Part shown: positions 24,396 through 44,452 of the stretch, piece after piece
How the letters are laid out: every line of letters begins with the position of its first letter
How positions within the stretch are numbered: position 1 is the stretch's first letter
From: Ylistrum balloti
Taxonomy: Eukaryota
Assembly (NCBI RefSeq): GCF_031769215.1
Contig: NW_026782835.1
Coordinates: 1-60,977, forward strand
Reading direction: 5' to 3'
Length of the DNA stretch: 60,977 nt
Translations under genes and position numbers: made by a program
The notes under the pieces: model-generated
What the model saw: only the letters and a program-made list of their open reading frames with translations
What the model was told of the DNA's origin: nothing
The model's database searches: none

Positions 24396-26914
24396 CTATC
24401 TCACTCGTATATAGAGGTTTATTTCAAACTGACTCAGCCAATCTGCTGGATTAAAAATATACTCATAATTTCTATTATTAGGATCTTGATTTGTTGCTCC
24501 CTCATAGTCATCTTCTATTAACTCAGTATCCGTAAAATCAAACCAAGCTAAAAAATCACCTAAACTAAAACGATACCGAAACTCTACATTGCTGCTTTCA
24601 AAGAAATTGCCAGAAAAGGAGGGTACGAGCGACCAATCGGGGACATAGGAGCGCGCAGAATTTACTAAGCCGGTGGTTTTTGCAAGCACACCAGCAAAAG
24701 ATTGTACCTCGGTAGGAGTAAAGGGTATATCAATATAATAGGAATTAGTGAGAGAAAAATTAAGTGCTGGATGTATATTATACGTGTAATTAAATTTTAC
24801 TGTGTGCCTGTAATCATTAAGAGCTGGCAACCAACCATCTTCGGCGGTTTCAAAATAGGTAAACCCCAATGTATATGAGAGATCTAGTAGTTGATTATCA
24901 GAGATAAACTGCCAGCGCAATGTTCCCCCGGTCCCATATCCATGCTGCACAGGAAAAAACGAGTATCCACGTTCATTCTCTATGGTATCGTACCTGTACT
25001 GACTAAACACACCATTAAAATTATAGTACCACCCAAAGTATGGTGTTACAGAAAGTTGGTGCTCCCCTAATGTAACAAGGTACTTGTTAAAGAACATAAA
25101 CCCATAATTGGGGTCTGTATATATCGTATCTCCTGCATCATACTTTATAGTTTCTTCCAGTATTTTTCTATCAATGTACTGTAATTTTTCTAAGAACGCT
25201 GGGCTCCAGCTTGCAAAGAAAGATATAGTGTATATATCGCTAAATGTTGTGGAGAGCTCCCCTCGCACAGAGGGGTACAATTGCTCGGGCGACTGGTATA
25301 TCCATGCAAGACCGGGTGAAAGAGAGAGCTTAAATTCTCCTCCCAAGTAGCTAGTCTCATAATCATATTGAAGATAGGTGTAGCTATGGAAGTACTCTTC
25401 ATCCACTACATACAAGGGCAGCTCAACTTGAATAATATCTCCAGGAATGTTTATATTCTCGTAAGAGTAGAGATCTTGATACTCTGCATATAAATTCGAG
25501 TAGTGCAAAATAGCTCCTATACTTAGCAGATGCTCATCTCCTAGTGCAAGAGAGAAGTTGTTTTTATGCCAATATCCCATACTGTAGAAGCTCCCTTATA
25601 ATCGTAGCCTCTGAATATATTTCTATTTTCTCTTTGCGCTGCTTGACGCTCTCGCTCCGGCACCACCTTAATGTTAAATTCTGTATCGGCTGTTGTCGTA
25701 TAGTAGTAGCCAGTAAAATCCAAAGCGTTAAAGCCAAAGGAACCCACAGCTCTTGACCACTGTATGCCGGCTCCCAGAAAATAAGGGAAACTGATTGTGT
25801 CTAACTCTACATTATCAGTCTCAGAAAAGACATTTATTGTGTCATAAAATGCTAGCGTAATAAATTTTACTCTGTCAACATCCTTTTGGTAGTCTAAAGA
25901 CAAAAACCAGTCTCCATAGAGATACCGCGTAATATCTGTTGTGGTGCCTGGAACCGTCGCCTCTACAAGCTGTTCGATAAGAGGGAACAGTGTATACTGA
26001 GCAATAGATTGTCGTGCAATAGTGAATATACTACCATTCTCGTCAAATTTTGTACGAAATCCTAGATAGGGATCAGTAAGGCCTATCCCAATATCATACT
26101 GTGTATCTATTACGTTTTCGGGGAAAACTATTACTGTACCCCCCAAGGCTTGGCCATACTGTCCTGGTGGTGTTCCTTTTATTGTTTTAATAGTACTAAT
26201 TGCTTCCTTGCTAATTATTGGTTTTGTGCTATCTGCGAGGTGTGTATTAGAAGGAATAGGAAGAAAGTCAATAAACGCTAAGTTCCAAGCTGTATCTCCT
26301 CCAAATACAGAATAAGACGATCCTGGTGCAAAAAAATTGCCGCTTCTGGGGTTAAGTATAAAGGGGGGTCCCTCTGCTATTTCAGAGTTAAGCACAACGC
26401 CTGCCTCTGTGGTAATAATGTTAAATGGATCGTTGTTGGGCACGGGTATATTATCTACCAATTCTTCGGTATACTCAGTTACATTTGGCTCTTCTTGTAT
26501 CTCACGCTCTGCGGTAACCACTATCTCTTCTTCAACTGTCGTCTCGCCTAGTTCAGGGGATATTTCAAAGATTTCTGGATTCTCCTCGTTGGATGCGTTG
26601 ACTTCTATATTAAAATCAAACTCCTCATCAAACACAAAAATCTTAAGAAAGTAGTTCCCTGCCTCTATATCATAGAATACAAACTTCCCATCCTCTCCAC
26701 TCAATTCCACAGCGTCTATTTCTACAATAACTACTGTTGCATCAGAAACTGCCTCTCCTGCATCCAGCACATACCCGTGGTATTCTAAAGCAAAAAGAGG
26801 GCTACTATACAAAAATAATAATACGCATAGTATTTTAACGTTTGCACTCACTACTAAATAATAGTACACTTTTACTATAAATGAAAGCACTAATATGCGA
26901 ATGATGCAAGACAA
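24396..26914 (-). pseudogene. TonB-dependent-receptor-like outer-membrane protein split by a -1 frameshift (ORFs 25541-26914 and 24396-25580)
   Basis: Signal peptide, carboxypeptidase-regulatory-like domain (GYVLDAGEAV.DATV..E), EEIVVTAER plug entry, then aromatic beta-strand-rich sequence continuing across the overlap. One extra A in the A5 run (T5 at 25561-25565) joins ..WDIGIK to NNFSLALG... True start probably near 26851. Confidence 0.6.
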
Positions 26915-27312
26915 TAAAGACCCCCTATATCCTCTCGCAGCACAGGACCTAGTAAGCGCGAGTCTAAACCTTTTTCATCTAATGCAAATACAGGAAGAGA
27001 ATGTGGTAGTGTATTGTTTTGGAGAATATAACTGCGGGTGCTTTCGTATACCCTCTTAATAACATAATGCCCCCTCGCTTCCATCCTTGCTGCTATATGT
27101 GGATGCACCTTCTCCAGCCATCTAGGGTGTATGGCAACATATGCTTCCGTGCACATTATGTGAGCATAGTTATACTGGCGTATATAATACCCAATTGGCA
27201 CCGAAGCACTTGTGTTCCGTAGAATAAGCGGGGCTACTCTCTCTTGTAATACAAGCAATATGCAAAGCCCACATACTATAACAGAACACGTTATCCAACA
27301 GTAGCGCTTCAT
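26890..27312 (-). CDS. traF: TraF-like S26 family pilin-processing peptidase
   Basis: N-terminal TM, RNTSASVPIGYY (Ser), YVIKRV (Lys), LDSRLLGPV match IncP TraF/S26 motifs; compact and divergent. Confidence 0.7.
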   Translation of the reverse strand: MKRYCWITCSVIVCGLCILLVLQERVAPLILRNTSASVPIGYYIRQYNYAHIMCTEAYVAIHPRWLEKVHPHIAARMEARGHYVIKRVYESTRSYILQNNTLPHSLPVFALDEKGLDSRLLGPVLREDIGGLYCLASFAY

Positions 27313-27689
27313 TCTCTTGTAATAAAAAAATACTGCTGTCTTAGATCTAATGTTTCAAGATAATCATCGGTGGCACTCAGCCAGAGAGGAAAAGAAATTA
27401 TAAAACCCAGGAGCCCTGCACCAAGTATGGAGTATCCTGTAATCACGGTACTATCTTGATAGAGATCAAATTCTTCGTTATTTGCTAACAATGCATACGA
27501 AGCTACTCCTCCACCAATTATCGCAATGATAAGCCCTGCAATAGCAATACCCTTATGTACTGACATGTGGTACTTGTGCTCCTCAATGTAAGCATCAAAA
27601 CTGTGCAGATCTTCCATCACATCAGCATAAGAAGCAAAGGGAGTACAGATTATACATAACAACATAATGCACAAAATAGTTCTCTTCAT
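27309..27689 (-). CDS. Hypothetical membrane protein (signal peptide plus two TM helices)
   Basis: 126-aa ORF, ATGA-coupled to traF, with Gly-rich hydrophobic segments. Confidence 0.7.
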   Translation of the reverse strand: MKRTILCIMLLCIICTPFASYADVMEDLHSFDAYIEEHKYHMSVHKGIAIAGLIIAIIGGGVASYALLANNEEFDLYQDSTVITGYSILGAGLLGFIISFPLWLSATDDYLETLDLRQQYFFITRE

Positions 27690-27704
27690 ATCTTTGTGTT
27701 CCCC

Positions 27705-29078
27705 CTACATGGGATCCATCTCAATATCATAATGCACAAAAACATGAGAAAGCGTTCCGGGTTCCACAGTAAGAGTTGCTTGCCGATCCAAAAATTTATT
27801 CGCTAGTCTTTCTGCAGAAGAAATGGCATTACTGCCGGTTCGTTGTAGCACATCAGAAAGAATCGCGGCTTCATTACCACTAGACTGTAACGAAGCTGCC
27901 CCATAATCCACACCTAACTGAAAAAGTGAGGAGAGTAAGGACACCCCAATACTAGCTCCAATGTTTGTGCGTACCCTAGATGCCACCCCAGCAGATCCTT
28001 GCGTATCCACCCCTTGCATGCCTTGAAGAAAAAGCACCACTCCATCTGTTCGTGTTACACGTTCCCATACAACAAGCACCCTCACCTGCCCCCATGATAT
28101 CTCAGAATCATAGGTTCCTATTAATGTAGACCCCTTAGGGATAAGCAGGTTGTAGCCGTGAAATGAATCGTAGATGTTCTCCACAACTCGAGCGCTTATA
28201 CTACCTGGAAGATCACTGTTAATTTGGCTAAGCAGTACTATAGGAATAATAGAACCTGCTGCCAACACCGATTTTGTATTCCTTATGCTGCTCCTTTCCT
28301 GTTGTATGCTCTTCGGTTCTTTAGATTGCTGCAGATCAAGAAATCCCTTCTTAGCTTGCTGAGAATTTTGCACATTGTAGTTCGATTGTGTCTCGGAAAA
28401 GTGTATTGCCTTCGACAGTACATCTCCTGCCTCTGTAATAGATTCCAAGTGTGGGATGGTAACTCCTGCTTTAGATACAAAGATAGCAGATAACCTCCCT
28501 TTCTCGATATGTGAAGCACTGCTTTCGGCAACTTCTTTTTTCCCCGATAACAGATCGCCTAATTGCCCCAACCTCTTGCTAAAGTTTGAGGCAATGCTAG
28601 TATACGTAGTGGTAGTGTTGCTGTAATCGGAACTTTCTCTAAACTGCTGAGGTATACGTACGCTGGTATCAGTACCCACATCATCAGTTATCACACCGTC
28701 TTTAACGCGTGGCAGAACATCTGCTGAGGGAGAATCACTACTATCACTACTATACACATTTCCTGTGCTTGCATCCTCATACACTAAGGATTTCATGCGT
28801 AGTTTTTGTATCTCATCTATTTCTTGCGCCTGCTTGCTATTAGGAAATACAGTGCTACCTAGCTGTTCTTTTATACTAGTATTGTAGTCGCTAGCTATAA
28901 TCTCCAAGTCATGTGGAACAATAACGGTAAACACCCCCTTCTTCTCTTCAACACTCTTTCTTTTACTTGTATGCGTGCTTCCTAAACCTATGACAAGAGC
29001 AGTAATTACAAGTCCAATAAACAACAGGAAAAGCAAACGAATGAGTTTAAGTTTTAATGTAATATTTTTTGGCAGCAT
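27705..29078 (-). CDS. trbI: TrbI/VirB10 family T4SS core protein
   Basis: N-terminal TM; C-terminal LAAGSIIPIVLLSQINSDLPG.I.ARV..NIYDS....LLIP.GS.LIG.Y.S....GQ.RVLVVW, GVD..G.AG, LTVEPG. Confidence 0.93.
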   Translation of the reverse strand: MLPKNITLKLKLIRLLFLLFIGLVITALVIGLGSTHTSKRKSVEEKKGVFTVIVPHDLEIIASDYNTSIKEQLGSTVFPNSKQAQEIDEIQKLRMKSLVYEDASTGNVYSSDSSDSPSADVLPRVKDGVITDDVGTDTSVRIPQQFRESSDYSNTTTTYTSIASNFSKRLGQLGDLLSGKKEVAESSASHIEKGRLSAIFVSKAGVTIPHLESITEAGDVLSKAIHFSETQSNYNVQNSQQAKKGFLDLQQSKEPKSIQQERSSIRNTKSVLAAGSIIPIVLLSQINSDLPGSISARVVENIYDSFHGYNLLIPKGSTLIGTYDSEISWGQVRVLVVWERVTRTDGVVLFLQGMQGVDTQGSAGVASRVRTNIGASIGVSLLSSLFQLGVDYGAASLQSSGNEAAILSDVLQRTGSNAISSAERLANKFLDRQATLTVEPGTLSHVFVHYDIEMDPM

Positions 29079-29080
29079 AC

Positions 29081-30031
29081 TTACTTGCCCCTTACTATTC
29101 TTAGAGAATCACTTTTCTTGTTTCCTAAACGTAGCTCTGCTATATCAAATATTCTATCTACAATATAGTAGTCTCCTAGTACCCTATAGTTTACAAGAGT
29201 GGAGTTTCCAGCAGTATCTAAAATAAACAGGGCTGGCGCACGTGCTGCGTGATAGGTATTAGAAAACTGTATAAAAGTTCTCTCACCATTATCAAAAACC
29301 TTGCTTGGTGTCCATTCTGGCTTGCTTCCATAATGGATAATAGTGTATGTAAATCGCAAATCCTTAAGTGCAACAGGTGTTTCAATAAGTTCCTGTTTCT
29401 TATCCCTTGCTAGCTGTTTTTTCGGATATCTCCACTCCACTGCAACCATATATGTATCATCATAACTTTCTAAACTAAGAAAATAACTGCGGAAATTCGT
29501 GTTAATGACCATATTTGTTTGTAGGTCTGAGAGCAGGGGTTTTATATATATAAATTGTCTGTCTTGAACAAAATTAGATTCAATAATCCAGTTCGCTGAA
29601 TCTCCTACCACTAATTCTCCATGTAACTCTTCCCTTTTTTCCAACCTTAGCACGGTAATTCTTAGTGGAGCGGTAAATATACTATATATATACTCTTCAT
29701 TGAAAACGTCTTCTACCAAGCTGTTATGTATCATTGCCTGCTTAGGTTGCTGCAGTGATTCCTTGTTCGCGAAATCTATGGCTTCCAGTGGATTCTTACT
29801 GTTGTTTACGTCTTCTTCAAGATGAAACAATGGAACACGCACTGCGGCAAAAGCAAGATCCTCCTGCACCTCTTCGTGTACTTCTAGTGTTTGCTCTGCT
29901 GTACTATTCATCATAGCTGCATCTCGCAGTTGCTGTGGCTGCACTGCTTCCCCCACTCCTGCTGCTCCAACGCATGCATGAAAAGATACACAGCAAGCAC
30001 TCAGTACTACACATTGCACAAAGTGCCTCAT
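29081..30031 (-). CDS. trbG: TrbG/VirB9 family T4SS core protein
   Basis: Lipobox-like LSAC, GDSANW, IYIKP...L.TNMVINTN.RSY, W.YP, W.P..VFDNG.RTFIQF, P.LF, VNYRV; start 30031 overlaps the trbF stop (ATGA). Confidence 0.92.
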   Translation of the reverse strand: MRHFVQCVVLSACCVSFHACVGAAGVGEAVQPQQLRDAAMMNSTAEQTLEVHEEVQEDLAFAAVRVPLFHLEEDVNNSKNPLEAIDFANKESLQQPKQAMIHNSLVEDVFNEEYIYSIFTAPLRITVLRLEKREELHGELVVGDSANWIIESNFVQDRQFIYIKPLLSDLQTNMVINTNFRSYFLSLESYDDTYMVAVEWRYPKKQLARDKKQELIETPVALKDLRFTYTIIHYGSKPEWTPSKVFDNGERTFIQFSNTYHAARAPALFILDTAGNSTLVNYRVLGDYYIVDRIFDIAELRLGNKKSDSLRIVRGK

Positions 30032-30678
30032 TCCTCTACCTCTACCCAATGAAACGTATCAATAAAGATACCTAGGGGGTTATAACGAAGTATGTCAACA
30101 TCACGTATGTTCCGTAGCTCTAACTTAAATACCCCTCTCCATGGTTTTTGTCGTATGATAACACCGTTTTTATTCCATGTGGTTTCCATCCAGTTTACTT
30201 GCCTCGTAAACTGCGAGTGTTCTAACACTGAGTTTACTTTTATATCCACTCGCTCTCTTTTGTATCTGTCTAAGGGTTGTATATTTCGAGCATACGTATT
30301 GAGAATGTTCGCCCCTGTTGGAGTAAGATAGTGATATGCATGCGTCCAATTCCTTTTTACAACAACAATATCGCTAGATAAAGAGCGAACATACTCTAAG
30401 AACTGTAGTAAATGAAACTTAATATGCTTTTCAGATACCTCAAAGCTACGTTCGTAGACTGAGCCCTTATACACAGCGGAACCATCATTCAGCACTTCTA
30501 TAACATGAGGAACTACCCTTGGTGCATCGAGTAGGGAAAGTAAGGAAAACCCTAAAAGCACAGAAAGCACAACTAAGAACAAGGCGCAAACCCCTAGTAG
30601 TCTTGCATGCATTTGTGCCTTACCCAGGCGATAGTCCCACCTTTGCTTTGTCTGAATATACGGATGTTCTATCTCCAT
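30028..30678 (-). CDS. trbF: TrbF/VirB8 family T4SS protein
   Basis: PY....QRWD.RLG.A, VVPHVIEV, RNW..AY..LT..GA..LN.YAR, NPLGIFI..F.W. Confidence 0.92.
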   Translation of the reverse strand: MEIEHPYIQTKQRWDYRLGKAQMHARLLGVCALFLVVLSVLLGFSLLSLLDAPRVVPHVIEVLNDGSAVYKGSVYERSFEVSEKHIKFHLLQFLEYVRSLSSDIVVVKRNWTHAYHYLTPTGANILNTYARNIQPLDRYKRERVDIKVNSVLEHSQFTRQVNWMETTWNKNGVIIRQKPWRGVFKLELRNIRDVDILRYNPLGIFIDTFHWVEVEE

Positions 30679-30750
30679 TTCAATATATAATATCTATATA
30701 AGTGGTCTTTGATTGAAATATACACAACAGATATAACAAAAGAGGGTTAT

Positions 30751-31749
30751 ATGGAATACAAAACATTAGGAAATTCTGGTATTAAAGTAAGCATGCTTTC
30801 TATGGGAGCTATGACATTTGGAAGAGAAACATCTAAGGAAGATAGTTTTACCATGCTGGATATTTTTGAGGAACATGGTGGAAACTTTATTGACAGCGCT
30901 AATATCTATTCATTAGGAATATCTGAAAAAATAGTAGGTGAATGGGTACAGCGTACAAATAGAGAACAACACATTATTGCCACTAAAGTGCGGTTCCCTA
31001 TGGGAAATACAGTAAACGAGCGTGGCTTAGGACGCAAGCATATCATACACTCAGTGCATGCTAGCTTAAAGCGATTAAAGACAGATTACATTGATGTGTT
31101 ATATGCTCACTGCTGGGATTACAGTACTCCTCTCGAGGAAACCATGGACGCTTTCTCTCGTTTAGTAGAGGAGGGGAAGGTACGATACATTGCAGCGAGT
31201 AATTTCTCCCCAAGCCAACTACAACGTGCCTGTGACATGAGTGTATACGAGGGTTATCAGCCTTTTATCGCTCTGCAATCAAAATACAATCTCATGATAC
31301 GCTCTGTAGAGTGGGAACTACTCAATGTATGCGAAGAAAATGGTATTGGGTTTGTAGTATGGGGGCCCTTGTTTGGCGGATGGCTTAGTGGGAGATATCA
31401 ACGTGGTATGACAGAAGCCCCCGAGGGGAGAGTAAGGGAAGCAGAAAAACACGATTGGTTTGAGAAGTGGTCGAAGTACAACAACGAAACTACATGGAAC
31501 ATTGTTGACACTGTGGGAACTGTGGCAAAAAAGCATAGCAAAAGTTATGCCCAGGTTTCGCTTAACTGGCTTAGCAAGCAGAAAGCTATCTCTTCGATCA
31601 TTCTAGGTGCAAGTAAAATTGAACATTTGAAGGATAACCTTGCTTGCATAGGATGGGACATGGACAGTGAAGACGAGGAGCTTCTAGAAAAAGCATCGAG
31701 TATAGAACTGCCGTATCCGTATGATTTTCTCGAAAAAACAAAAGAATAA
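30751..31749 (+). CDS. Aldo/keto reductase
   Basis: LGNSGIKVS.LSMGAMTFG, GGNFIDSANIY (catalytic Asp/Tyr), IATK, SLKRLKTDYIDVLY.H, GKVRYI..SN, QSKYNL, WGPL.GG.LSG; AGAGGG SD before ATG 30751. Confidence 0.93.
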   Translation: MEYKTLGNSGIKVSMLSMGAMTFGRETSKEDSFTMLDIFEEHGGNFIDSANIYSLGISEKIVGEWVQRTNREQHIIATKVRFPMGNTVNERGLGRKHIIHSVHASLKRLKTDYIDVLYAHCWDYSTPLEETMDAFSRLVEEGKVRYIAASNFSPSQLQRACDMSVYEGYQPFIALQSKYNLMIRSVEWELLNVCEENGIGFVVWGPLFGGWLSGRYQRGMTEAPEGRVREAEKHDWFEKWSKYNNETTWNIVDTVGTVAKKHSKSYAQVSLNWLSKQKAISSIILGASKIEHLKDNLACIGWDMDSEDEELLEKASSIELPYPYDFLEKTKE

Positions 31750-31769
31750 CTACAGCACTACAAGCAGCC

Positions 31770-32903
31770 CTATACTGAATTTTTCTCTACTGAGTTTCGG
31801 GGAGTATCCTTAAAGGAATTTTTTGCAGACCGTTGAGTGGTATTCCTCTCATCGCTTTCGGATCTGCCATGTGCTTCCCTCGAAGAAAACGCATCAGAAT
31901 TACTGTGCTTTCTCGAGAGCGGTGGGATGTTGTTTTCTTCATAAGGAAGAGGGCTAGATGCATTAGAAGAATTGAGATCTGGTATATTTTCTTTTATAGA
32001 GTCTGCAAAAGCCCCTCCTTTTGTAATGGCGGTAGAAGAAGTAAGCACTGCCATAGTCAATGACGCCGCTCGTTGCATAGGGGAATTTCCTATATCACCC
32101 GCTGGCATAAATGCATTGATAATACTCCCCGATTGTAAGATCAAATACACTCCTATAGTCATGTGTAAGATCATAACTAGCTGTGACACAAAAGTAACAC
32201 CATCATCTGTATCCATGCGACGTACTATTTCCAAAAAGCTCTCTATCACAAAACCAGAGACAAGAGAAATACTCAATATTCGTATCCCCTGAAACATAAG
32301 AACAGACATTACATTAGAGCTTATAAATCGGGTGTGTTCATTTGCCTGAAAAGGCACAAGCAAAATAGCTAAGAGCAAAATAAAATAGAATTCAATCTGC
32401 ACCATACATAAAACAATTACAATTATGGCTATAATCACAATTAAGCCTATAAATATTATCATCGAAGTAAGCGCTGGTACAATTACCTTTACGATATTCC
32501 ATAAACTTACATCCAGCAATTCGCGTATCTTGTCTATGTACTGTTGGAAGATATGCTCGGTAGCATACGAAAACAACTCAAAGGGGTTGCTTAAATAATC
32601 AAGGGAATATCCATGTATGCGTAACCCCATGCTTTGTAGTGTTTCTGCAAATATAATACCTATGCTATCTATATTCCTAATAAGATATATCCACACCCCT
32701 ACATACAGTACCTTTTTTATTATTTCTTCTAGCGATGCAATTTCGCCTAGTATCATTTTAATACCAATGCATATTATTTCAAACAGCAGAACTGTCCATA
32801 GAATAATATCTGCTACTGCGTATGCAGACTGATAATACGATTGTATTTTCTCCACATAGAAATCAAAACTATTGTAGAGATCTTCTAAAGAATCTTCTGT
32901 CAT
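31770..32903 (-). CDS. trbL: TrbL/VirB6 family T4SS inner-membrane protein
   Basis: Polytopic membrane protein with IEFYFILLLAILLVPF...TRF.S..V TrbL pattern and low-complexity C-tail; located after trbJ. Confidence 0.85.
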   Translation of the reverse strand: MTEDSLEDLYNSFDFYVEKIQSYYQSAYAVADIILWTVLLFEIICIGIKMILGEIASLEEIIKKVLYVGVWIYLIRNIDSIGIIFAETLQSMGLRIHGYSLDYLSNPFELFSYATEHIFQQYIDKIRELLDVSLWNIVKVIVPALTSMIIFIGLIVIIAIIVIVLCMVQIEFYFILLLAILLVPFQANEHTRFISSNVMSVLMFQGIRILSISLVSGFVIESFLEIVRRMDTDDGVTFVSQLVMILHMTIGVYLILQSGSIINAFMPAGDIGNSPMQRAASLTMAVLTSSTAITKGGAFADSIKENIPDLNSSNASSPLPYEENNIPPLSRKHSNSDAFSSREAHGRSESDERNTTQRSAKNSFKDTPRNSVEKNSV

Positions 32904-32918
32904 GTAGTCTCCGCTCTG

Positions 32919-33578
32919 CTAATGAAGCTTCCAAAATGCATCTACTGTTTTCTGTATGAGTTTCTCTTCTTCTTCATGCACAAGGGATTCTAGCATTGTA
33001 ATATGAGATCCTATTTTTGTTTCTTCAATAAGTTGCATAAGTTGCCGGTTAGATGCTAGCACGTTAGTGTTAAGCAACTGTAATTGTTGAAGCACAGTAT
33101 GCTTGCTTTTTATCTGTTCTGTTACTGCTTCTGCAAAATTAAAACCCTTCACGATAGCGTTTTCTGTATTACTACCTAACAAAATCATTTCTTTTAGACT
33201 TTGTATAGACCTCTCTATATCATTTACTACAAACCCCTTGATACGATCCTCAAACCCCTCCCGAAGGAGCAGTTCTCTTTGGTGTAATAACTCCTGTATA
33301 AATTCTCCATACGCAAGCCCTTGCACAACGAAATTGTACAGAGCATCATTTTCTTCGTGAAGGATAGAATCTATTACTATATCTTCAAATTCCTGGTACA
33401 GTTGAAAGAAAAACTGAAGTTCTTCTTCGCTTTGTAGGAGCTGCTCTAGTTGCTGATACAAGATAGAAGTAAGGATGGGTATAACCCCTGCATCACCAAA
33501 TTGAGGATGTGCTATATCAAGCCCAAATACTCCAAAAAAACACAGCAGTAAGATAGTTCTTTGTATAGACTGCAACAT
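32919..33578 (-). CDS. trbJ: Divergent TrbJ/VirB5-like exported protein
   Basis: AAGGAGG SD before ATG 33578, signal peptide, Gln/Leu-rich helical body, position between trbE and trbL. Assignment rests mainly on synteny. Confidence 0.6.
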   Translation of the reverse strand: MLQSIQRTILLLCFFGVFGLDIAHPQFGDAGVIPILTSILYQQLEQLLQSEEELQFFFQLYQEFEDIVIDSILHEENDALYNFVVQGLAYGEFIQELLHQRELLLREGFEDRIKGFVVNDIERSIQSLKEMILLGSNTENAIVKGFNFAEAVTEQIKSKHTVLQQLQLLNTNVLASNRQLMQLIEETKIGSHITMLESLVHEEEEKLIQKTVDAFWKLH

Positions 33579-33600
33579 TCGTGCCCTCCTTTTTACTGTA

Positions 33601-35892
33601 TTATGTGTGTGCCTGCATAAGCATTCGTAGTATGTTTTCATTTAAATCTAAAGAAAATAGCGCACTTTTACTCTGCGCCCTTATATAATACTCGTGCTTT
33701 GGTGTAGCAGACGCAAGCAGTGCAACCTCCTCTGTATGCAGGCCGAATTTTGCATACATTGCTTGCATCTGTTCGTTCATAGCAGCTTTATTTGGAAGAA
33801 ATATTTGTACATGGCAAGCATTCATTATAGTATCTACAAGCGATGAATGCGCCAAATCCACTACATCTTGGGTAGCTAGCACTACAAATACATGTTTTTT
33901 TCGTAATGTTTTAAGCCATGCACGAAAGCGATCTGCAAAAAACTCATGTTTTAGAAAGAGCCACCCTTCATCTATAATTAAAAGCGTTGGCTTCCCTGTA
34001 AACATTTTCTCTACTTTGTGAAAGAGATACATCAATGCTGGAATAAGTACCTGCTCTCCCATATCCATTAAGTACCCCAACTCTACCATAAGCCAGTTTC
34101 TTTTGAAGATATTCTTTCCTTCACCATCAAACACAGAACCGTACATTCCTTCTTTGCTATATTTTCCAAATATACGTTTCGATGTTGTAAACTGTAGAAG
34201 CTCTACAAATGCAGCTACAGTTCTTTCGCTCTCATCCATGTCTGCAAGTAGCAAAAGACATCTTTTTATATCTTCTATCTCTTCTGGGCTACACCTATAA
34301 TTGTTAAGAAACAACAATTCTTCGCAAAATTGTAATGCCCAGTACCGCTCTTGTTCTGCACAGATATCGCTAAAAACCTGAAACGCTGCTTCGTTGGGAG
34401 CTCCAGGAACAAATACCTCTCCAGATACATTCTCGCTTAAGTGCTTCGAAGAAAAATCCTTATCGAAGATAATAACACGTGCCTTAGGATAGCGTAAAAA
34501 TTGCACAGCTAACATTGCTAGAAATGTAGATTTACCTGAACCTGTTGGCCCAACGACAAAACTATGCCCCACATCTTCCACATTGTTATTAAAATAAAAT
34601 ACATTGCTCTCAGAACTTGCTACCATAAGCGGATCTGCATTACCAGAAACTTCTTTCATAAACATATTCTGCTTCATACCATTCCAGGGGGTAGAAAGGG
34701 GAATAAGGTGAGATGCGTTTACTGTATGAATAAGGAATTTTCTTGCGTTAGCATACACATGCCCGGGGAGCGAAGAAAGCCAAGCTTCTACTGTGTTTAC
34801 TGTTTCTTCTTTTATGATAAACCCTCTATTGTGAAATATCTTTTTAATAACATCAACCTTTTTACCCAGCATATTTTTATCGGAATCCTTCAGTACTACT
34901 ACAGAAGTAAGTAAGCCAAAATTAACTCTTCCCTTACCTATCAACTGTAGCGCTGCATCAGCATCCATTGCTTTTACCAGCGATTCTGTATTCTCCAGCG
35001 CCTGTTCCTTATTCACCTGCTCCTGCATTACCTTAAAAGTATTTTTTCTTTTAGCGTAATGTTTTCTTCTTATCTGTTTTATCCGTGATAGTACATTCGC
35101 TTCATTCAAAAACAGAAAGCGTTGTTGAAAGCGAAAATCGATGTCGCAGCTCTGCAAATCCTTTAGAATATTTGCTCGTGTATGGTGCGGAAAATCGTTT
35201 ATAGACAAAACAGCACAGTAATCTTCACCAACAGTAAAATCTTGCTCTACGCACATGTTTTGATCTGCTATGTATTCGCTAATATCTACAGTTTCTGGAG
35301 GAGCAAGTACCTGCTGCTCCTTGCCAGAGACACAGAAATGAATATACGATAATGTCTGTGCATTATCCAGCTGCTCAACTCCCAAAAAACACTCTTCAAG
35401 CATGCCTTGTATGCTCCTCATGTTCTTTATGAACTCCTTTAGTGCATTATTCAAAGAATATTTGGCTGCATTAAAAAACATCGCAAGCTTTCCACCGCTC
35501 TTGCTCTGGTGGCAAAATGTTATGTAATACTCCATAGTATACAGTTTGCTCTGTGAATAGCACCTCTTCCTTTCATATTCTATGCACGCAGCAAGCTCCG
35601 AATCCCAGTGTTCTTGAAATTTCAGCTGTTCTTGTTTTCGAATTGACTCTACAAATACCGACCAACCACTTCCAAACCTCATCATCATATTGTTTACAGA
35701 CGCAACCACACTATCCACCTCCTCTGCTTTTGCGGTAGCAAGATATGCGGGTTGTACCTTAAACGTACTCTGAAACACACTATCTTTCTGAACAAGAACA
35801 GATGGTGCTACAAAGCAGCTCCACGGAAGAAAATCTGCTAATAAACGCCCTCTGTGCTTGTTAAAGTAACGTACATCTAGGTAATCTAACAC
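33601..35892 (-). CDS. trbE: TrbE/VirB4 family ATPase
   Basis: LADFLPW...AP.VLVQKD, DVGHSFVVGPTGSGKSTFL (Walker A), IIFDKD.S, IIDEGW (Walker B), WLKTLRKK...V.LATQ. Confidence 0.95.
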   Translation of the reverse strand: MLDYLDVRYFNKHRGRLLADFLPWSCFVAPSVLVQKDSVFQSTFKVQPAYLATAKAEEVDSVVASVNNMMMRFGSGWSVFVESIRKQEQLKFQEHWDSELAACIEYERKRCYSQSKLYTMEYYITFCHQSKSGGKLAMFFNAAKYSLNNALKEFIKNMRSIQGMLEECFLGVEQLDNAQTLSYIHFCVSGKEQQVLAPPETVDISEYIADQNMCVEQDFTVGEDYCAVLSINDFPHHTRANILKDLQSCDIDFRFQQRFLFLNEANVLSRIKQIRRKHYAKRKNTFKVMQEQVNKEQALENTESLVKAMDADAALQLIGKGRVNFGLLTSVVVLKDSDKNMLGKKVDVIKKIFHNRGFIIKEETVNTVEAWLSSLPGHVYANARKFLIHTVNASHLIPLSTPWNGMKQNMFMKEVSGNADPLMVASSESNVFYFNNNVEDVGHSFVVGPTGSGKSTFLAMLAVQFLRYPKARVIIFDKDFSSKHLSENVSGEVFVPGAPNEAAFQVFSDICAEQERYWALQFCEELLFLNNYRCSPEEIEDIKRCLLLLADMDESERTVAAFVELLQFTTSKRIFGKYSKEGMYGSVFDGEGKNIFKRNWLMVELGYLMDMGEQVLIPALMYLFHKVEKMFTGKPTLLIIDEGWLFLKHEFFADRFRAWLKTLRKKHVFVVLATQDVVDLAHSSLVDTIMNACHVQIFLPNKAAMNEQMQAMYAKFGLHTEEVALLASATPKHEYYIRAQSKSALFSLDLNENILRMLMQAHT

Positions 35893-36122
35893 AAAAAATA
35901 ACTTGGGTAGCGCATAGATCGAAGTGCTATATCAAAAAAGAACTCGTCAACTCTCATAATCAGCACTGAAACTATATGTAGAAGAAGACCGAACGGCAAT
36001 ATCCACCACTGCCTAGCTGCTAACACAGCTACCAAAACAGAAAACCACAGTAAGTAACAGACACGCTCATGCACCCCGGCAATGGTAATGGGATGCAATA
36101 ATGATTGATACACTCTTACCAT
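35886..36122 (-). CDS. trbD: TrbD/VirB3 family protein
   Basis: VYQSL.HP..IAGV.ER, two TM segments, D..FFDI..R; located between trbC and trbE. Confidence 0.85.
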   Translation of the reverse strand: MVRVYQSLLHPITIAGVHERVCYLLWFSVLVAVLAARQWWILPFGLLLHIVSVLIMRVDEFFFDIALRSMRYPSYFLC

Positions 36123-36125
36123 ACA

Positions 36126-36440
36126 TCATCCCACAGCAAACACACCCTCGCCAGAACCAAAGAGTAGGCTCAGTACACTTGGTGCATTCAAAGCAATTCC
36201 AATACCCATAACAACAAAAAATATTTTTTGTTTTGCATTTCCTCCGTCTGATGTTGCAAGCATAATACCTGCTCCTGCTATAAGTATGACTCCTATAATC
36301 ATTACAGTTCGCCCAGTAAGTGCTTTCTGTATTTTTTCTAACGCCGAATCCCATGGCATGGATTCTTCCGAATCAGATACTGCCCATGCAGATACAGACA
36401 AAATAAATAATAAAAAAGAAGTTGCACATAGTTTTTTCAT
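36126..36440 (-). CDS. trbC: TrbC/VirB2 family pilin
   Basis: Signal peptide ending AWA, MPWDSALEKI...LTG, two hydrophobic helices, Gly-rich C-terminus. Confidence 0.9.
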   Translation of the reverse strand: MKKLCATSFLLFILSVSAWAVSDSEESMPWDSALEKIQKALTGRTVMIIGVILIAGAGIMLATSDGGNAKQKIFFVVMGIGIALNAPSVLSLLFGSGEGVFAVG

Positions 36441-37387
36441 ATCATGTCCTCTGTTATAAATAAGTTGTTTTTATATTCTTTTACTTTTTTTATCTCAACT
36501 ACCTTTCGTAGCGAGGCTTCTCGTTTTACAAATACGCAGAGATCCACTACTTCAGCTATAAAATTGCGTGGTGCTGATTCTACCGCTTCTTCTGTAAGCT
36601 GAGCAAGTCGCTCTAAGGCAAGGGAGGCCGAGTTTGCATGTATAGTGGTCATACCTCCACCATGCCCTGTATTCCAAGCTTTCAGTAAATCGAGAGCTGC
36701 AGCATCGCGTAATTCACCTATAATTACTCTATCAGGTCTCATACGTAGCACATCTCGAATAGCCCGTGCATATGAATACGCAGCACTGGTTCGAAGTCGT
36801 GCGCCTTTTCGCGAATGTAGGTGGAGTTCTTCTGTATCTTCAATAATAATTAACCTCTCTGTGCTTACCTTCTTATCACGAAGCATTGCATTTAATACAG
36901 TTGTTTTCCCAGAGCCCGTTCCTCCGGCAATGATAATATTCCATCTTTCCTCTACTGCTTTTTCTAACACCTGCATCCCCTTACTGCTAAGAGTCTTCTG
37001 CTCCACTAGATCCTTTAAGCAGAGCAAGGAAGACTTGTTTTTCCGTATGCTAAATATAGGAAATTTCGTGATAGGGGGTATGACTCCTTGAAAGCGATAT
37101 AAATAGGATTGTAGTTCAGCAGAAAAAGAAGGGGACTGTGCATTGACTGTTATACCATTGCTACTTGCAACCACTCGTATTATTCTCTCTACCTGATTAC
37201 TGTCGAGACAGAGTTCTGTGTTAAAAATCGTGTTCCCTCTCTCTACCATAACATACCCTCCCTCGTTTACCATGATCTCATTTACTTCATTGTCAATAAG
37301 ATATGGAACTATAGGAGTAAGTATCTTTTGCTGTAACGTTCCTTGCTGTATCTTTGTCATTGTACAAAGAGATACGTTAAAAATCAC
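36437..37387 (-). CDS. trbB: TrbB/VirB11 family secretion ATPase
   Basis: NEIMVN, GGTGSGKTT, IEDTEEL, LRMRPDRVIIGELR, AWNTGH.GG.TTIHANSA. Start may be ATG 37360. Confidence 0.95.
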   Translation of the reverse strand: MIFNVSLCTMTKIQQGTLQQKILTPIVPYLIDNEVNEIMVNEGGYVMVERGNTIFNTELCLDSNQVERIIRVVASSNGITVNAQSPSFSAELQSYLYRFQGVIPPITKFPIFSIRKNKSSLLCLKDLVEQKTLSSKGMQVLEKAVEERWNIIIAGGTGSGKTTVLNAMLRDKKVSTERLIIIEDTEELHLHSRKGARLRTSAAYSYARAIRDVLRMRPDRVIIGELRDAAALDLLKAWNTGHGGGMTTIHANSASLALERLAQLTEEAVESAPRNFIAEVVDLCVFVKREASLRKVVEIKKVKEYKNNLFITEDMI

Positions 37388-39127: not shown

Positions 39128-40017
39128 GTCGTGTTTCCATCTACATCTATACTAAATCGATCTATACTAAATCGCTGTTTTTGGAGTATGATTATAACAA
39201 GGTACACCTCTAATACCAAAAAAATATAAAATATTATCTGAAGGCTGATGATGCTAAGAGAACTTATGTGCAACAGGTAGTATGTTATAGGAAGCCATTG
39301 TAGCAAGAGCAAAAAACGTATTATTTTGTGCGCAACAATGTAACCAAGAAGAAAGCCTAACATATACACAAGAACAACTAAGAAATAAAAAAGTATTTTC
39401 CATGAACTATCAGTATCCTTATCTTCTGAAAAAATAAAGCTGTGCTCTACATGGAATCTTTCATAGAAACGTTCTTGTTCCGGTCTAAATGCCATTACAT
39501 CAGTTCTCAGAATGTTAAAACGAACTTTAGGATCCAGTGCTACAAGACTAATGGTTTGTGTTGGATCATCCTCGTAAAAGAACATAACATTCATTTGTTC
39601 ACTATCTTCCCATATATATGATGGCACTGTTGGTTCATTTACTCTGAGTTTTGATGTAATATCTGCTGATATAAATTCAATGTAATCACTAGGATTCAGA
39701 GGTATAATAAGCACTCTATTTGTTCTTTTCTCCATTTCTTGAAAATAGCTTGTGCTGTCCATGTTTTCCCAAACAACAATAATAACGAAGATACACAGCG
39801 ATATTGCAAGGAAAGACCTCCACTGCTTGCGTAGCATATACACTTTAGATTTTGAAAAAAACACAGAAAGAGCAAGAGCGACACCCACTATATGCATAAG
39901 CCACTCCCAATAAAATACCCATACTAGCTCTGGAGATAGTATATTACTCATTCCAAACAACAAAAAGAGAAGGGAAATAACTGGTAGCATAATAAGGAAA
40001 AGGGTTGTTGCTTTCAT
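39124..40017 (-). CDS. Hypothetical polytopic membrane protein
   Basis: 297-aa ORF with three N-terminal and about three C-terminal TM segments around a soluble loop. Confidence 0.7.
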   Translation of the reverse strand: MKATTLFLIMLPVISLLFLLFGMSNILSPELVWVFYWEWLMHIVGVALALSVFFSKSKVYMLRKQWRSFLAISLCIFVIIVVWENMDSTSYFQEMEKRTNRVLIIPLNPSDYIEFISADITSKLRVNEPTVPSYIWEDSEQMNVMFFYEDDPTQTISLVALDPKVRFNILRTDVMAFRPEQERFYERFHVEHSFIFSEDKDTDSSWKILFYFLVVLVYMLGFLLGYIVAHKIIRFLLLLQWLPITYYLLHISSLSIISLQIIFYIFLVLEVYLVIIILQKQRFSIDRFSIDVDGNTT

Positions 40018-44446: not shown

Positions 44447-44452
44447 ATAAAT

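What the first reader, a model, noticed from the sequence alone, without database searches (positions are those of the whole stretch)
26890..37387. Intact orphan P-type (Trb) type IV secretion/pilus system in a spirochaete-like chromosome, with no DNA-transfer module
Seen: trbB, C, D, E, J, L, F, G, I and traF are all open, mostly stop/start-coupled ORFs with intact Walker and family motifs. Nearby mobile or accessory DNA (IS1595, DUF285) is visibly ruined. No relaxase, TraG/VirD4 coupling protein, oriT-like repeat, integrase, TrbK/TrbH or lytic transglycosylase is recognisable between 24.4 and 40.6 kb. Established: these genes form the IncP/Ti-type mating-pair apparatus, and T4SS are not a textbook feature of Borrelia, Treponema pallidum or Leptospira. 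Inference: this may be a domesticated T4SS used for host interaction, adhesion, protein export or DNA uptake rather than conjugation.
Basis: partly seen in the sequence, partly recalled or inferred. Interest (0 to 1): 0.87.

Follow-up and report, generated by a model that had tools for sequence, protein, structure and literature searches.

The report
Domesticated Trb secretion system in spirochaete
A bacterial contig inside a scallop genome assembly carries a complete Trb-type type IV secretion machine that has lost the parts needed to transfer DNA by mating. It has nevertheless been kept intact in a small group of uncultured spirochaetes, so it now probably serves another purpose, most plausibly DNA uptake.

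Summary
On the minus strand at 26890-37387 lie intact trbB-C-D-E-J-L, an inserted aldo-keto reductase on the plus strand, then trbF-G-I, a small membrane protein and a minimal TraF-like peptidase. The window is a whole 61-kb bacterial contig in a 648-Mb scallop assembly. Its nearest relatives are "Spirochaetia bacterium" MAGs.

The same cluster sits among the same housekeeping neighbours in those relatives, including a closed 2.36-Mb chromosome. I found no coupling protein, no relaxase of the five families searched, no integrase and no att repeats there. The same searches do find coupling proteins in other Spirochaetia. The trb genes evolve under purifying selection (dN/dS about 0.06-0.28), like their neighbours, and their composition matches the chromosome. 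The sister Treponema Trb systems still carry a coupling protein, and three of the four also a relaxase.

So this is a vertically inherited, co-opted secretion system without a coupling protein, not a decaying mobile element. Its job is untested. A second spirochaete lineage couples trb-traF to the genome's only comEC. All five carrier genomes searched lack secretins and other pilus ATPases. This makes ComB-like DNA uptake the leading guess (about 0.35), ahead of an adhesive pilus or two-step secretion.

The only coupling protein and relaxase in the assembly lie on another contig (C601). It belongs to a self-sufficient conjugative element of different composition.

The parts
36437..37387 (-). 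trbB (VirB11-family ATPase)
   Evidence: PF00437 5.9e-38 and TIGR02782 TrbB_P 1.7e-86. Walker A GGTGSGKT, Asp box and His box present. 55% identical to the G001 orthologue.
36126..36440 (-). trbC (VirB2-type pilin)
   Evidence: PF04956 8.8e-15. It is the most conserved protein of the cluster: 74-76% identity to G001/L009, dN/dS 0.065.
35886..36122 (-). trbD (VirB3-like)
   Evidence: PF05101 6.8e-4, below the cut-off. Lies between trbC and trbE. 55-58% identical to orthologues that also carry PF05101.
33601..35892 (-). trbE (VirB4 ATPase)
   Evidence: NF010447 TrbE 2.4e-198 and PF03135. Walker A and B are invariant in alignment A1. 54% identical to P0001/P0002.
32919..33578 (-). trbJ-like gene (VirB5 position); the ORF is open to 33641 but the likely start is Met22, which follows AAGGAGG
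   Evidence: No family hit. Supported by position, a signal peptide and a coiled coil. 24-31% identical to the gene at the same place in relatives. Weak hhalign match to proteobacterial TrbJ (E 0.0011). Start codon.
31770..32903 (-). trbL (VirB6)
   Evidence: PF04610 4.8e-17 and TIGR02783 3e-21.
30709..31749 (+). Aldo-keto reductase gene inserted between trbL and trbF; cargo, not a T4SS part
   Evidence: PF00248 3.8e-73. The same junction holds a 6-7 kb TRAP-transporter/dehydrogenase block in G001 and L009, and nothing in L010, G006 or G033.
30028..30678 (-). trbF (VirB8)
   Evidence: PF04335 1.5e-33. NF010446 TrbF 153.4 bits, above its 152-bit cut-off.
29081..30049 (-). trbG (VirB9), with a lipobox-like LSAC in its signal peptide
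   Evidence: PF03524 7e-52 and TIGR02775 3.1e-46. N-terminus read.
27705..29078 (-). trbI (VirB10)
   Evidence: PF03743 1.8e-43 and NF010405 1e-40.
27309..27689 (-). Small membrane protein (126 aa: signal peptide plus two helices) conserved after trbI
   Evidence: No family hit. 36-42% identical orthologues lie at the same position in G001, G002 and L010. G006 has a 132-aa membrane protein there.
26890..27312 (-). Minimal TraF-like S26 peptidase (candidate pilin-maturation enzyme)
   Evidence: Invariant N-x-S-x-S-V-P-x-G-x-Y, Lys86 and DS..G. The aligned G033 homologue hits TIGR02771 TraF at 2.7e-21. AlphaFold model pLDDT 81.7. Its seven best structural matches are all signal peptidase or LexA fold, Z 5.7-3.6. 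The direct HMM hit is only 0.14.

Best explanation
**Layer 1 (about 0.8, largely shown).** This is a chromosomally fixed, vertically inherited Trb-type (MPF-T) type IV secretion apparatus in an uncultured Spirochaetia lineage. It has lost the coupling protein (T4CP), the relaxase and every sign of mobility. Selection still keeps it intact, so it has been co-opted for a job other than conjugation. It still encodes the following:
- both remaining ATPases (TrbE/VirB4 and TrbB/VirB11);
- the inner-membrane parts (TrbD, TrbL, TrbF);
- the outer-membrane core (TrbG, TrbI);
- the pilin (TrbC);
- a VirB5-position protein and a probable pilin peptidase.

It should therefore assemble an envelope-spanning channel with a pilus or pseudopilus.

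**Layer 2 (about 0.35, inferred).** The most likely job is uptake of external DNA across the outer membrane. The DNA would be handed to the ComEC inner-membrane channel, as in the Helicobacter pylori ComB system. The confidence figure given is for the whole statement, including layer 2.
For: **Chromosomal fixation and descent**
- The same cluster lies beside lgt-ctpA-fxsA in G001 (a closed 2.36-Mb chromosome), G002 and L009. It lies beside AGPS/rmuC/mnmE in G006. The window shares one flank with each.
- In the MnmE tree the window falls with G001/G002 (99*), inside a starred clade of 7. The TrbE tree repeats the window-G001/G002 grouping.
- The cluster's tetranucleotide profile matches the rest of the contig (r 0.965).
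- There is no tRNA or att repeat, and no integrase hit in the ORFs scanned.

**Loss of the transfer module**
- PF02534 was not found in any of the five TrbE-carrying genomes. PF10412 (G001 and G002 only) hit nothing but the TrbB P-loop and a HerA helicase.
- PF03432 was found in none of 61 relatives. PF08751, PF03389 and PF07514 were found in none of G000, G001, G002, G006 and G033.
- Positive controls: the same search finds T4CPs in 20 of 401 Spirochaetia genomes. The sister Treponema Trb loci carry a T4CP, and three of the four a relaxase, 2-5 kb upstream of trbE.

**Selection**
- dN/dS is 0.06-0.28 for trb genes against 0.10-0.16 for lgt and ctpA, at dS 0.6-1.1.
- The pooled trb value is 0.108 at dS about 0.12.
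- All genes are full length, with ATPase motifs present.

**DNA uptake**
- A second T4CP-less Trb lineage in relatives of G001 has trbBCDEJLFGI-traF-comEC, kept down to 61% TrbE identity. In G033 comEC overlaps traF by ATGA and is the genome's only comEC.
- G001, G002, G006 and G009 each have a single comEC. TrbB is their only PilB/GspE/VirB11-family ATPase, and they have no secretin, so no conventional uptake pilus is visible.
- H. pylori ComB is now known to need a VirB11 ATPase as well (PMC13395361). The presence of TrbB is therefore no objection.
Against: - In the window's own clade comEC is not linked to trb (in G001 it lies 1.2 Mb away).
- The comEC-linked lineage falls elsewhere in the TrbE tree and is probably an independent acquisition. 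A single clade was not rejected (AU p 0.16).
- comEC is nearly universal (59 of 61 relatives). Forty relatives have comEC with neither Trb nor a secretin, so the disjoint distribution is not significant.
- No comEC was found in the scallop assembly itself. The symbiont genome there is incomplete.
- ComB has no known VirB5 or pilin peptidase. Here the pilin is the most conserved protein and the VirB5-position protein the fastest-evolving, which fits an adhesive pilus equally well.
- There is no expression evidence: no sequencing run was listed.
- G001 is one chromosome of a MAG, so an unbinned plasmid carrying a T4CP cannot be excluded.
Confidence: 0.35

Rival explanations
1. Adhesive or contact pilus, as in Bartonella Trw. 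The machine keeps only its pilus-building function, and the pilus binds host tissue, other cells or particles. Nothing is translocated.
For: - No T4CP and no candidate substrate genes lie next to the cluster in any relative.
- The pilin TrbC is the most conserved protein (74-76% identity, dN/dS 0.065; no amino-acid change between G001 and G002).
- A pilin-peptidase-like gene is retained.
- The VirB5-position protein, the usual pilus-tip adhesin, is the fastest-evolving component (24-31% identity, dN/dS 0.28).
Against: - Trw shows amplified, variable pilin and VirB5 copies (PMC12857230). Here each gene is single copy.
- Host association of the relatives is unknown.
- This reading does not explain the trb-traF-comEC operon in the parallel lineage.
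Confidence: 0.2
2. T4CP-independent protein export, as in Bordetella Ptl or Brucella VirB. Substrates would reach the periplasm by Sec and be pushed out, or into host cells, through the TrbG/TrbI core.
For: - T4CP-less T4SS that secrete proteins exist, so the architecture allows this (PMC12857230, section 'Systems lacking VirD4 homologs'; PMC3548315).
- Both ATPases and the whole core are kept under purifying selection.
- The organism may be associated with an animal host.
Against: - No toxin or effector candidate is linked to the cluster in any of the syntenic loci. The neighbours are housekeeping genes.
- The two membrane proteins upstream belong to the lgt-ctpA-fxsA block. They also occur in relatives without Trb.
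Confidence: 0.15
3. Still a conjugation or mobilisation apparatus. It would use a T4CP and relaxase that are too divergent to recognise, or that are supplied in trans by a plasmid or ICE such as the element on contig C601.
For: - The scallop assembly does hold a T4CP and a MOBP relaxase on C601.
- MAG chromosomes can miss plasmids.
- Only five relaxase families were searched. MOBV, MOBT, MOBC and MOBB were not.
Against: - C601 carries its own VirB4 (two copies) and VirB8, 9, 10 and 11. Their closest matches among the loci held are proteobacterial Trb proteins (about 31% identity for VirB4).
- Its tetranucleotide correlation with the window is 0.75, against 0.98 within the window.
- No PF02534 T4CP was found in any of five carrier genomes, while the same search finds T4CPs elsewhere in the class.
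- The locus has stayed at one chromosomal place, without integrase or att, across TrbE divergence down to 32% identity.
Confidence: 0.1
4. A decaying remnant of an old integrative conjugative element that has not yet accumulated disruptions and has no function.
For: - The transfer module is gone.
- A foreign gene or gene block interrupts the cluster between trbL and trbF.
- Nearby DNA holds IS and methylase fragments.
- Three of the seven genomes in the closest MnmE clade lack the cluster.
Against: - All eleven genes are full length in the window and have full-length counterparts in G001 and G002 (L009 and L010 for the genes covered).
- dN/dS is 0.06-0.28, equal to that of the housekeeping neighbours, at two time depths.
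- ATPase motifs are present.
- Window and G001 proteins are as similar as their housekeeping neighbours: TrbE 54%, TrbF 61%, CtpA 63%, Lgt 58%, MnmE 54%.
Confidence: 0.05

Closest known systems
IncP (RP4) / Ti-plasmid Trb mating-pair-formation system (MPF-T, P-type)
   Same: Gene content and order match: trbB-C-D-E-J-L-F-G-I. For every recognisable component the best NCBIfam hits are the P-type Trb models. A TraF-like peptidase is present.
   Different: - There is no TraG coupling protein, relaxase, oriT region, TrbK, TrbH or lytic transglycosylase.
- Scores fall below the equivalog cut-offs for all but TrbF. TrbE is at most 38% identical to ordinary TrbE and about 55 residues shorter.
- The cluster is chromosomal, fixed in place and split by a metabolic gene.
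Helicobacter pylori ComB competence T4SS
   Same: - A MOB-less, T4CP-less T4SS made only of core VirB homologues and embedded in the chromosome.
- It needs VirB4 and, as shown in 2026, a VirB11 ATPase (PMC13395361).
- It works with ComEC in a bacterium that has no type IV pilus. The carrier genomes here likewise have ComEC but no secretin and no other PilB-family ATPase.
   Different: - It arose from a different branch of MPF-T and in a different phylum.
- ComB has no known VirB5 or pilin peptidase, and it has the ComH DNA receptor.
- In the window's clade comEC is unlinked. The physical trb-comEC link is seen only in a parallel spirochaete lineage.
- DNA uptake is untested here.
Bartonella Trw T4SS
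   Same: It derives from a conjugative MPF-T system, has lost the T4CP, is chromosomal and is retained by selection. Its proposed function is an adhesive pilus rather than translocation (PMC12857230).
   Different: Trw has tandemly amplified variable pilin and VirB5 genes and comes from the R388/IncW branch. Here every gene is single copy and of the Trb branch.
Bordetella pertussis Ptl and Brucella VirB systems
   Same: Both are T4CP-less T4SS that retain VirB11 and the full core (PMC3548315, PMC12857230).
   Different: Ptl is linked to its toxin operon and Brucella VirB has known effectors. No substrate genes are linked here.
Chromosomal relaxase-less T4SS of Patescibacteria
   Same: A lineage-wide, chromosomal, vertically kept T4SS without a relaxase, interpreted as co-opted for a non-conjugative role (PMC12102498).
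   Different: That system is of the monoderm MPF-FATA class. This one is a diderm MPF-T Trb system, and it is confined to a small clade rather than a whole phylum.

Membership tests
P-type Trb (MPF-T) type IV secretion apparatus | VirB4/TrbE ATPase with Walker A and B motifs | tested here: met
   NF010447 TrbE 2.4e-198 and PF03135 4e-21. GPTGSGKS and LLIIDE are present and invariant among relatives.
P-type Trb (MPF-T) type IV secretion apparatus | VirB11/TrbB hexameric ATPase | tested here: met
   TIGR02782 TrbB_P 290 bits (cut-off 304.6) and PF00437 5.9e-38. Walker A, Asp box and His box present.
P-type Trb (MPF-T) type IV secretion apparatus | VirB2-type pilin (TrbC) and VirB3 (TrbD) | tested here: met
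   PF04956 8.8e-15 for TrbC. PF05101 6.8e-4 for TrbD is below the cut-off, but the gene has the right size and position and conserved orthologues.
P-type Trb (MPF-T) type IV secretion apparatus | Core channel: VirB6 (TrbL), VirB8 (TrbF), VirB9 (TrbG), VirB10 (TrbI) | tested here: met
   PF04610 4.8e-17, PF04335 1.5e-33, PF03524 7e-52 and PF03743 1.8e-43.
P-type Trb (MPF-T) type IV secretion apparatus | VirB5-type protein (TrbJ) | tested here: inconclusive
   No Pfam or NCBIfam hit. hhalign against six proteobacterial TrbJ gives E 0.0011, probability 20%, over the C-terminal Q-L-Q..N region. Position and signal peptide fit.
P-type Trb (MPF-T) type IV secretion apparatus | TraF pilin-maturation peptidase (S26 family) | tested here: inconclusive
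   Direct HMM hit is only 0.14. The Ser/Lys/DS..G motifs are invariant. hhalign to the TraF of G033 gives E 3.8e-4, probability 36%. The seven best structural matches are all S24/S26 fold, Z 5.7-3.6. Orthologues in the parallel lineage carry PF10502.
P-type Trb (MPF-T) type IV secretion apparatus | VirB7-type lipoprotein (TrbH), entry exclusion (TrbK), VirB1 transglycosylase | tested here: not met
   No ORF with such a hit lies in 24.4-40.6 kb. TrbG has a lipobox-like LSAC that might replace TrbH. These are accessory features, not defining for the MPF core.
Self-transmissible conjugative element (ICE or plasmid) | Type IV coupling protein (VirD4/TraG) | tested here: not met
   PF02534 was found in none of G001, G002, G006, G009 and G033. 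PF10412 (run on G001, G002 and G000) hit only the TrbB P-loop and a HerA helicase in the two relatives. In G000 the only hit is on C601. Positive control: 20 of 401 Spirochaetia genomes have a T4CP.
Self-transmissible conjugative element (ICE or plasmid) | Relaxase | tested here: not met
   PF03432 was found in none of 61 relatives. PF08751, PF03389 and PF07514 were found in none of G000, G001, G002, G006 and G033. MOBV, MOBT, MOBC and MOBB were not searched.
Self-transmissible conjugative element (ICE or plasmid) | Integrase, att repeats or tRNA target; variable location | tested here: not met
   No integrase hit in the flanks. The only tRNA is 8.7 kb beyond the flanking genes. No bracketing direct repeats. 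The location among housekeeping genes is conserved in relatives.
ComB-type competence T4SS | Core VirB set with VirB4 and VirB11 but without T4CP and relaxase | tested here: met
   See the rows above. The need for VirB11 in ComB is from PMC13395361.
ComB-type competence T4SS | ComEC present, and no type IV pilus or secretin route for uptake | tested here: inconclusive
   There is a single comEC in G001, G002, G006, G009 and G033. Those genomes have no secretin and no second PF00437 ATPase. However, 40 relatives have comEC with neither system, and no comEC was found in the incomplete G000 set.
ComB-type competence T4SS | Genetic coupling to competence genes | tested here: not met
   comEC is unlinked in the window and in G001. 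A trb-traF-comEC operon is present only in the parallel G033 lineage.
ComB-type competence T4SS | Demonstrated uptake of DNA into the periplasm | not testable with these tools
   This needs labelled-DNA uptake and transformation assays in a carrier organism or a reconstituted system.

The most novel reading that the evidence does not exclude
Spirochaetes have recruited a conjugative Trb machine as their natural-transformation uptake device, independently of Helicobacter. They have done so at least once and possibly twice. In one lineage the T4SS operon is translationally coupled to the cell's only comEC. In the window's lineage the same kind of stripped-down machine is kept at a fixed chromosomal site. 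This would be the second known origin of T4SS-driven competence, and the first from the Trb branch.
Probability: 0.3. Interest if true: 0.8.

Novelty: new variant of a known kind. Interest (0 to 1): 0.6.

Why it matters
- **A rare class gains a candidate.** Only four kinds of T4SS that work without a coupling protein are described: Ptl, Brucella VirB, Bartonella Trw and Helicobacter ComB. Each taught something about how the machine can be re-used. This would be a fifth lineage, from the Trb branch, in a phylum where VirB4-type systems are rare (6 of 401 Spirochaetia genomes sampled).
- **An evolutionary series.** The data give conjugative Treponema relatives that still have a T4CP (three of four also a relaxase). 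They also give a stripped-down, chromosomally fixed clade under purifying selection, and a parallel lineage welded to comEC. That series makes the question of what a T4SS does once it stops conjugating directly testable.
- **Gene flow in symbionts.** If DNA uptake is confirmed, it would explain how gene flow can occur in uncultured, possibly animal-associated spirochaetes that have no visible uptake pilus.

Tried and rejected
- **Close-relative scan.** A single-protein scan of genome contigs with TrbE found nothing. It succeeded only with an alignment.
- **16S search.** The search of the assembly failed on a tool error and was not repeated.
- **Sequencing runs.** None was listed for the trbB-trbL stretch, so I have no expression evidence.
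- **C601 as the missing transfer module.** Rejected: it has its own complete T4SS and a different composition.
- **The two membrane proteins upstream (37475-40017) as T4SS accessories or effectors.** Rejected: the 550-aa protein's homologue sits next to lgt-ctpA-fxsA in relatives that have no Trb, and in G006 on a contig away from its trb cluster. Atlas neighbours are spirochaete membrane proteins, some LptF/LptG-like.
- **The TonB-receptor-like ORFs (24396-26914) as the tail of the system.** Not conserved next to trb in any relative.
- **TraF-like searches.** The profile search of the big protein database returned only its own clade. The PDB sequence search gave a spurious phage Gp33 hit. Foldseek gave no significant hit.
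- **Complementary distribution of Trb and secretin/GspE.** The sets are disjoint (0 of 5 against 16-17 of 56), but this is expected by chance about one time in five.
- **Promoter and terminator scan.** Fewer matches than in shuffled sequence, so uninformative.
- **One origin for all T4CP-less spirochaete TrbE.** Neither shown nor rejected (AU p 0.16). The better-sampled tree separates the two lineages.
- **G315 and G230.** These are the other VirB4 carriers in the class sample. They are not members of this clade: one is VirB-type, the other has a T4CP.

Full report
**What the window is.** The window is the whole of contig C978 (60,977 bp, no N) of an assembly of 648.5 Mb in 1,372 contigs. Earlier notes of this scan identify that assembly as a scallop genome (s1-246931, s1-232029). 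The contig is bacterial and densely coding. It carries ordinary chromosomal genes around the finding: dnaX, citrate synthase, isocitrate dehydrogenase, rmuC and mnmE on one side; fxsA, a CtpA-type protease and lgt on the other. GC is about 0.40 throughout, apart from a low-GC patch at 44-47 kb.

**The observation.** Family searches confirm an uninterrupted set of Trb genes on the minus strand:
- trbB, 36437-37387
- trbC, 36126-36440
- trbD, 35886-36122
- trbE, 33601-35892
- a TrbJ-position gene, 32919-33641
- trbL, 31770-32903
- trbF, 30028-30678
- trbG, 29081-30049
- trbI, 27705-29078

For every recognisable component the best NCBIfam model is the P-type Trb one. All but TrbF score below the equivalog cut-off, so this is a divergent branch. 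The ATPase motifs are present. Junctions are overlaps or gaps of a few bases.

Two small genes follow trbI. One encodes a 126-aa membrane protein. Direct HMM support for it is poor (0.14). It does keep the Ser, Lys and DS..G motifs of S26 peptidases across five homologues. One aligned homologue is a clear TraF (2.7e-21). An AlphaFold model (pLDDT 81.7) has signal peptidases, SipA, LexA and UmuD' as its seven best structural matches (Z 5.7-3.6). I accept it as a minimal TraF-like peptidase with moderate confidence.

The TrbJ name rests on position, a signal peptide and a weak profile match. Its real start is probably Met22, which follows a strong AAGGAGG.

Nothing resembling a coupling protein, relaxase, integrase, TrbK, TrbH or transglycosylase lies between 24.4 and 40.6 kb. 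No tRNA or att-like repeat brackets the cluster.

**Whose genome it is.** TrbE has only three close relatives among 5.8 billion proteins: 54%, 54% and 46% identity. The next hits drop to 38%. The two best lie on a 2,360,799-bp record titled 'MAG: Spirochaetia bacterium ... chromosome: 1' (G001; its ENA contig name ends in _c, which I take to mean circular) and on another Spirochaetia MAG. The neighbouring housekeeping proteins are as similar as the Trb proteins: CtpA 63%, Lgt 58%, MnmE 54%, against TrbE 54%, TrbB 55%, TrbF 61% and TrbC 74%. A MnmE tree puts the window with G001/G002 (99*), inside a starred clade of seven genomes.

**Synteny.**
- In G001, G002 and a third genome (L009) the order is lgt, ctpA, fxsA, two membrane proteins, trbBCDEJL, a 6-7 kb block of TRAP-transporter and dehydrogenase genes, then trbFGI, the small membrane protein and the TraF-like gene.
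- In G006 the cluster lies next to rmuC, mnmE and the AGPS pair, which is the window's other flank.
- The window thus shares one flank with each relative. This is what a long-resident chromosomal locus looks like.
- The trbL-trbF junction holds different cargo in different genomes and none in L010, G006 or G033. It is an insertion hot spot, and the cluster must be transcribed as at least two units there.
- The two membrane proteins upstream of trbB are not part of the system. The homologue of the larger one sits beside lgt-ctpA-fxsA in G003, G004 and G005, which lack Trb. In G006 it lies on a contig away from the trb genes.

**Is the transfer module really missing?** In the scallop assembly the only T4CP and the only MOBP relaxase lie on contig C601. 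C601 also encodes two VirB4 proteins and VirB8, 9, 10 and 11. Its VirB4s are closest (about 31%) to proteobacterial TrbE among the loci held. Its tetranucleotide profile correlates 0.75 with the window, against 0.98 between the two halves of the window and 0.965 between the trb region and the rest. It is a separate, self-sufficient conjugative element, probably of another bacterium.

The symbiont's genome is incomplete in this assembly: no comEC was found at all. I therefore relied on relatives.
- In G001 and G002, PF02534 gave nothing. PF10412 hit only the P-loop of TrbB and a HerA helicase.
- Among 61 relatives of G001, TrbE occurs in five (G001, G002, G006, G009, G033), and none of the five has PF02534.
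- PF03432 was found in none of the 61.
- PF08751, PF03389 and PF07514 were found in none of G000, G001, G002, G006 and G033.
- The negative result is meaningful, because the same search finds T4CPs in 20 of 401 Spirochaetia genomes.
- A local iterative search finds a T4CP in all four Treponema Trb loci, and a relaxase in three of them, 2-5 kb upstream of trbE. It finds none in the loci of the window's clade.
- Caveats: MOBV, MOBT, MOBC and MOBB were not searched, and MAGs can miss plasmids.

**Descent and selection.** In TrbE trees the groupings window + G001/G002 (100*), then L010 (99*), G006 (96*) and G009 (96*) form one clade. The conjugative Treponema clade lies next to it. Where it can be compared, this agrees with the MnmE tree.

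| Comparison | Gene(s) | dN/dS | dS |
|---|---|---|---|
| G001 vs L009 | trbF | 0.064 | 0.6-1.1 |
| G001 vs L009 | trbC | 0.065 | 0.6-1.1 |
| G001 vs L009 | trbE | 0.116 | 0.6-1.1 |
| G001 vs L009 | trbD | 0.13 | 0.6-1.1 |
| G001 vs L009 | trbL | 0.14 | 0.6-1.1 |
| G001 vs L009 | trbB | 0.18 | 0.6-1.1 |
| G001 vs L009 | trbJ | 0.28 | 0.6-1.1 |
| G001 vs L009 | ctpA (neighbour) | 0.10 | 0.6-1.1 |
| G001 vs L009 | lgt (neighbour) | 0.16 | 0.6-1.1 |
| G001 vs G002 | trb genes pooled | 0.108 (195 synonymous, 84 non-synonymous differences) | about 0.12 |

In the G001-G002 comparison the pilin has no amino-acid change. The ctpA value in that run is an alignment artefact and should be ignored.

All eleven genes are full length in the window and have full-length counterparts in G001 and G002. 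Three of the seven genomes in the closest MnmE clade lack the cluster, so there have been losses or later gains. The 'decaying ICE' reading is nevertheless not tenable.

**What it may do.** Four kinds of T4CP-less T4SS are known: Ptl (toxin release), Brucella VirB (effectors), Bartonella Trw (adhesive pili) and Helicobacter ComB (DNA uptake) (PMC12857230; PMC3548315). In every syntenic locus here the cluster is bare. The neighbours are housekeeping genes such as pntAB, NAPRTase, radA and argG, with no linked candidate substrate.

The most informative lead comes from a second T4CP-less Trb lineage found among the relatives. In G033 the operon trbBCDEJLFGI-traF runs straight into comEC with an ATGA overlap, and that is the genome's only comEC. 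The same trb-traF-comEC arrangement, between lplA and argG, is kept in contigs whose TrbE is only 83% and 61% identical. That lineage falls elsewhere in the better-sampled TrbE tree, near ordinary Trb systems. It is therefore probably an independent co-option, although a single origin was not rejected (AU p 0.16).

All five carrier genomes have one comEC and no secretin, and TrbB is their only PilB/GspE/VirB11-family ATPase. If they take up DNA, the Trb machine is the only visible route across the outer membrane. This is the situation in H. pylori, whose ComB is now known to require a VirB11 ATPase too (PMC13395361).

Several points count against this reading.
- comEC is unlinked in the window's own clade.
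- comEC is nearly universal, and most relatives have it with no visible uptake machine.
- The disjoint distribution of Trb and secretin systems is not significant.
- The combination of a highly conserved pilin, a retained pilin peptidase and a fast-evolving VirB5-position protein fits an adhesive pilus equally well.

My estimates are: DNA uptake about 0.35; adhesive pilus 0.2; two-step protein export 0.15; cryptic conjugation 0.1; a remnant with no function 0.05.

**Novelty.** MOB-less T4SS and their repeated co-option are established ideas (PMC3548315). A lineage-wide chromosomal relaxase-less T4SS has been described in Patescibacteria (PMC12102498). My paper searches found no description of this spirochaete system. 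A 2026 survey states that no Cristispira genome is public. Cristispira is mentioned only because it is the classical bivalve spirochaete; I have no evidence that this contig is Cristispira. VirB4-type systems are rare in the class: 6 of 401 genomes sampled, four of them from this clade. I class the finding as a new variant of a known kind: a Trb-branch T4SS without a T4CP or relaxase, fixed in a spirochaete chromosome, with a parallel comEC-coupled lineage that makes a function testable.

**Limits.**
- There is no expression evidence.
- The window organism's genome is incomplete.
- The relatives are MAGs of unknown habitat.
- The trees are quick-search trees with long branches (G006, G009).
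- The function is inferred, not shown.

Noticed in passing
G000 contig C601 (loci L001-L007), 40,229 bp: A separate conjugative element sits in the same scallop assembly. It carries a MOBP relaxase (27057-28856), a T4CP (29159-31075), VirB11 (31463-32410), two VirB4 genes (9302-11740 on the minus strand, 34541-37000 on the plus strand) and VirB8/9/10 (4567-7411). A purD gene sits in the middle of the transfer genes. Its composition differs from the window (tetranucleotide r 0.75).
   Followed up: partly
L059:2985-13923 (G033); L101:8471-19475; L102:621-12213; L103: A second T4CP-less Trb lineage has its operon ending in an S26 TraF and the genome's only comEC (ATGA overlap in G033). The arrangement lies between lplA and argG and is kept down to 61% TrbE identity. 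Three of the contigs come from very large assemblies (GCA_040777145.1, GCA_040777385.1, GCA_040777565.1).
   Followed up: partly
window:24396-26914: Two overlapping minus-strand ORFs (457 and 394 aa) lie here. The first has a CarboxypepD_reg-like N-terminus. Together they look like one outer-membrane receptor or barrel gene split by a frameshift. They overlap the end of the TraF-like gene but are not found next to trb in any relative.
   Followed up: partly
window:37475-40017: Two coupled multi-pass membrane proteins (297 and 550 aa) show a pattern of three helices, a large loop and three helices, with no Pfam hit. Atlas neighbours are spirochaete membrane proteins, some LptF/LptG-like. The 550-aa protein's homologue travels with lgt-ctpA-fxsA across the clade, whether or not Trb is present.
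   Followed up: partly
window:44000-47000 and window:20772-21395: A low-GC island (0.31) holds an IS1595 transposase fragment (44438-45055) and a truncated N6_N4 DNA methylase (45800-46261). Another N6 methylase fragment lies at 20772-21395.
   Followed up: partly
window:30709-31749; L008:14042-21045; L009:14253-19976: The trbL-trbF junction is an insertion hot spot. It holds an aldo-keto reductase in the window and a TRAP transporter with dehydrogenase and isomerase genes in G001 and L009. It holds nothing in L010, G006 and G033.
   Followed up: partly
L058:15202-19308 (G009): A 1,368-aa ORF with no Pfam hit follows the TrbJ-position gene where trbL is expected. No trbF, trbG or trbI was found in the 20 kb fetched.
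   Followed up: no
G007, G008, G009, G027: These relatives (1.4-2.2 Mb) gave no MnmE orthologue, only weak hits to paralogous GTPases. This may reflect genome reduction or incompleteness.
   Followed up: no
L060 (G006:C52:1-19999): In G006, rmuC, mnmE and trbB each appear split across frames. Housekeeping genes are affected too, so this looks like indel errors in the assembly rather than decay of the T4SS.
   Followed up: no
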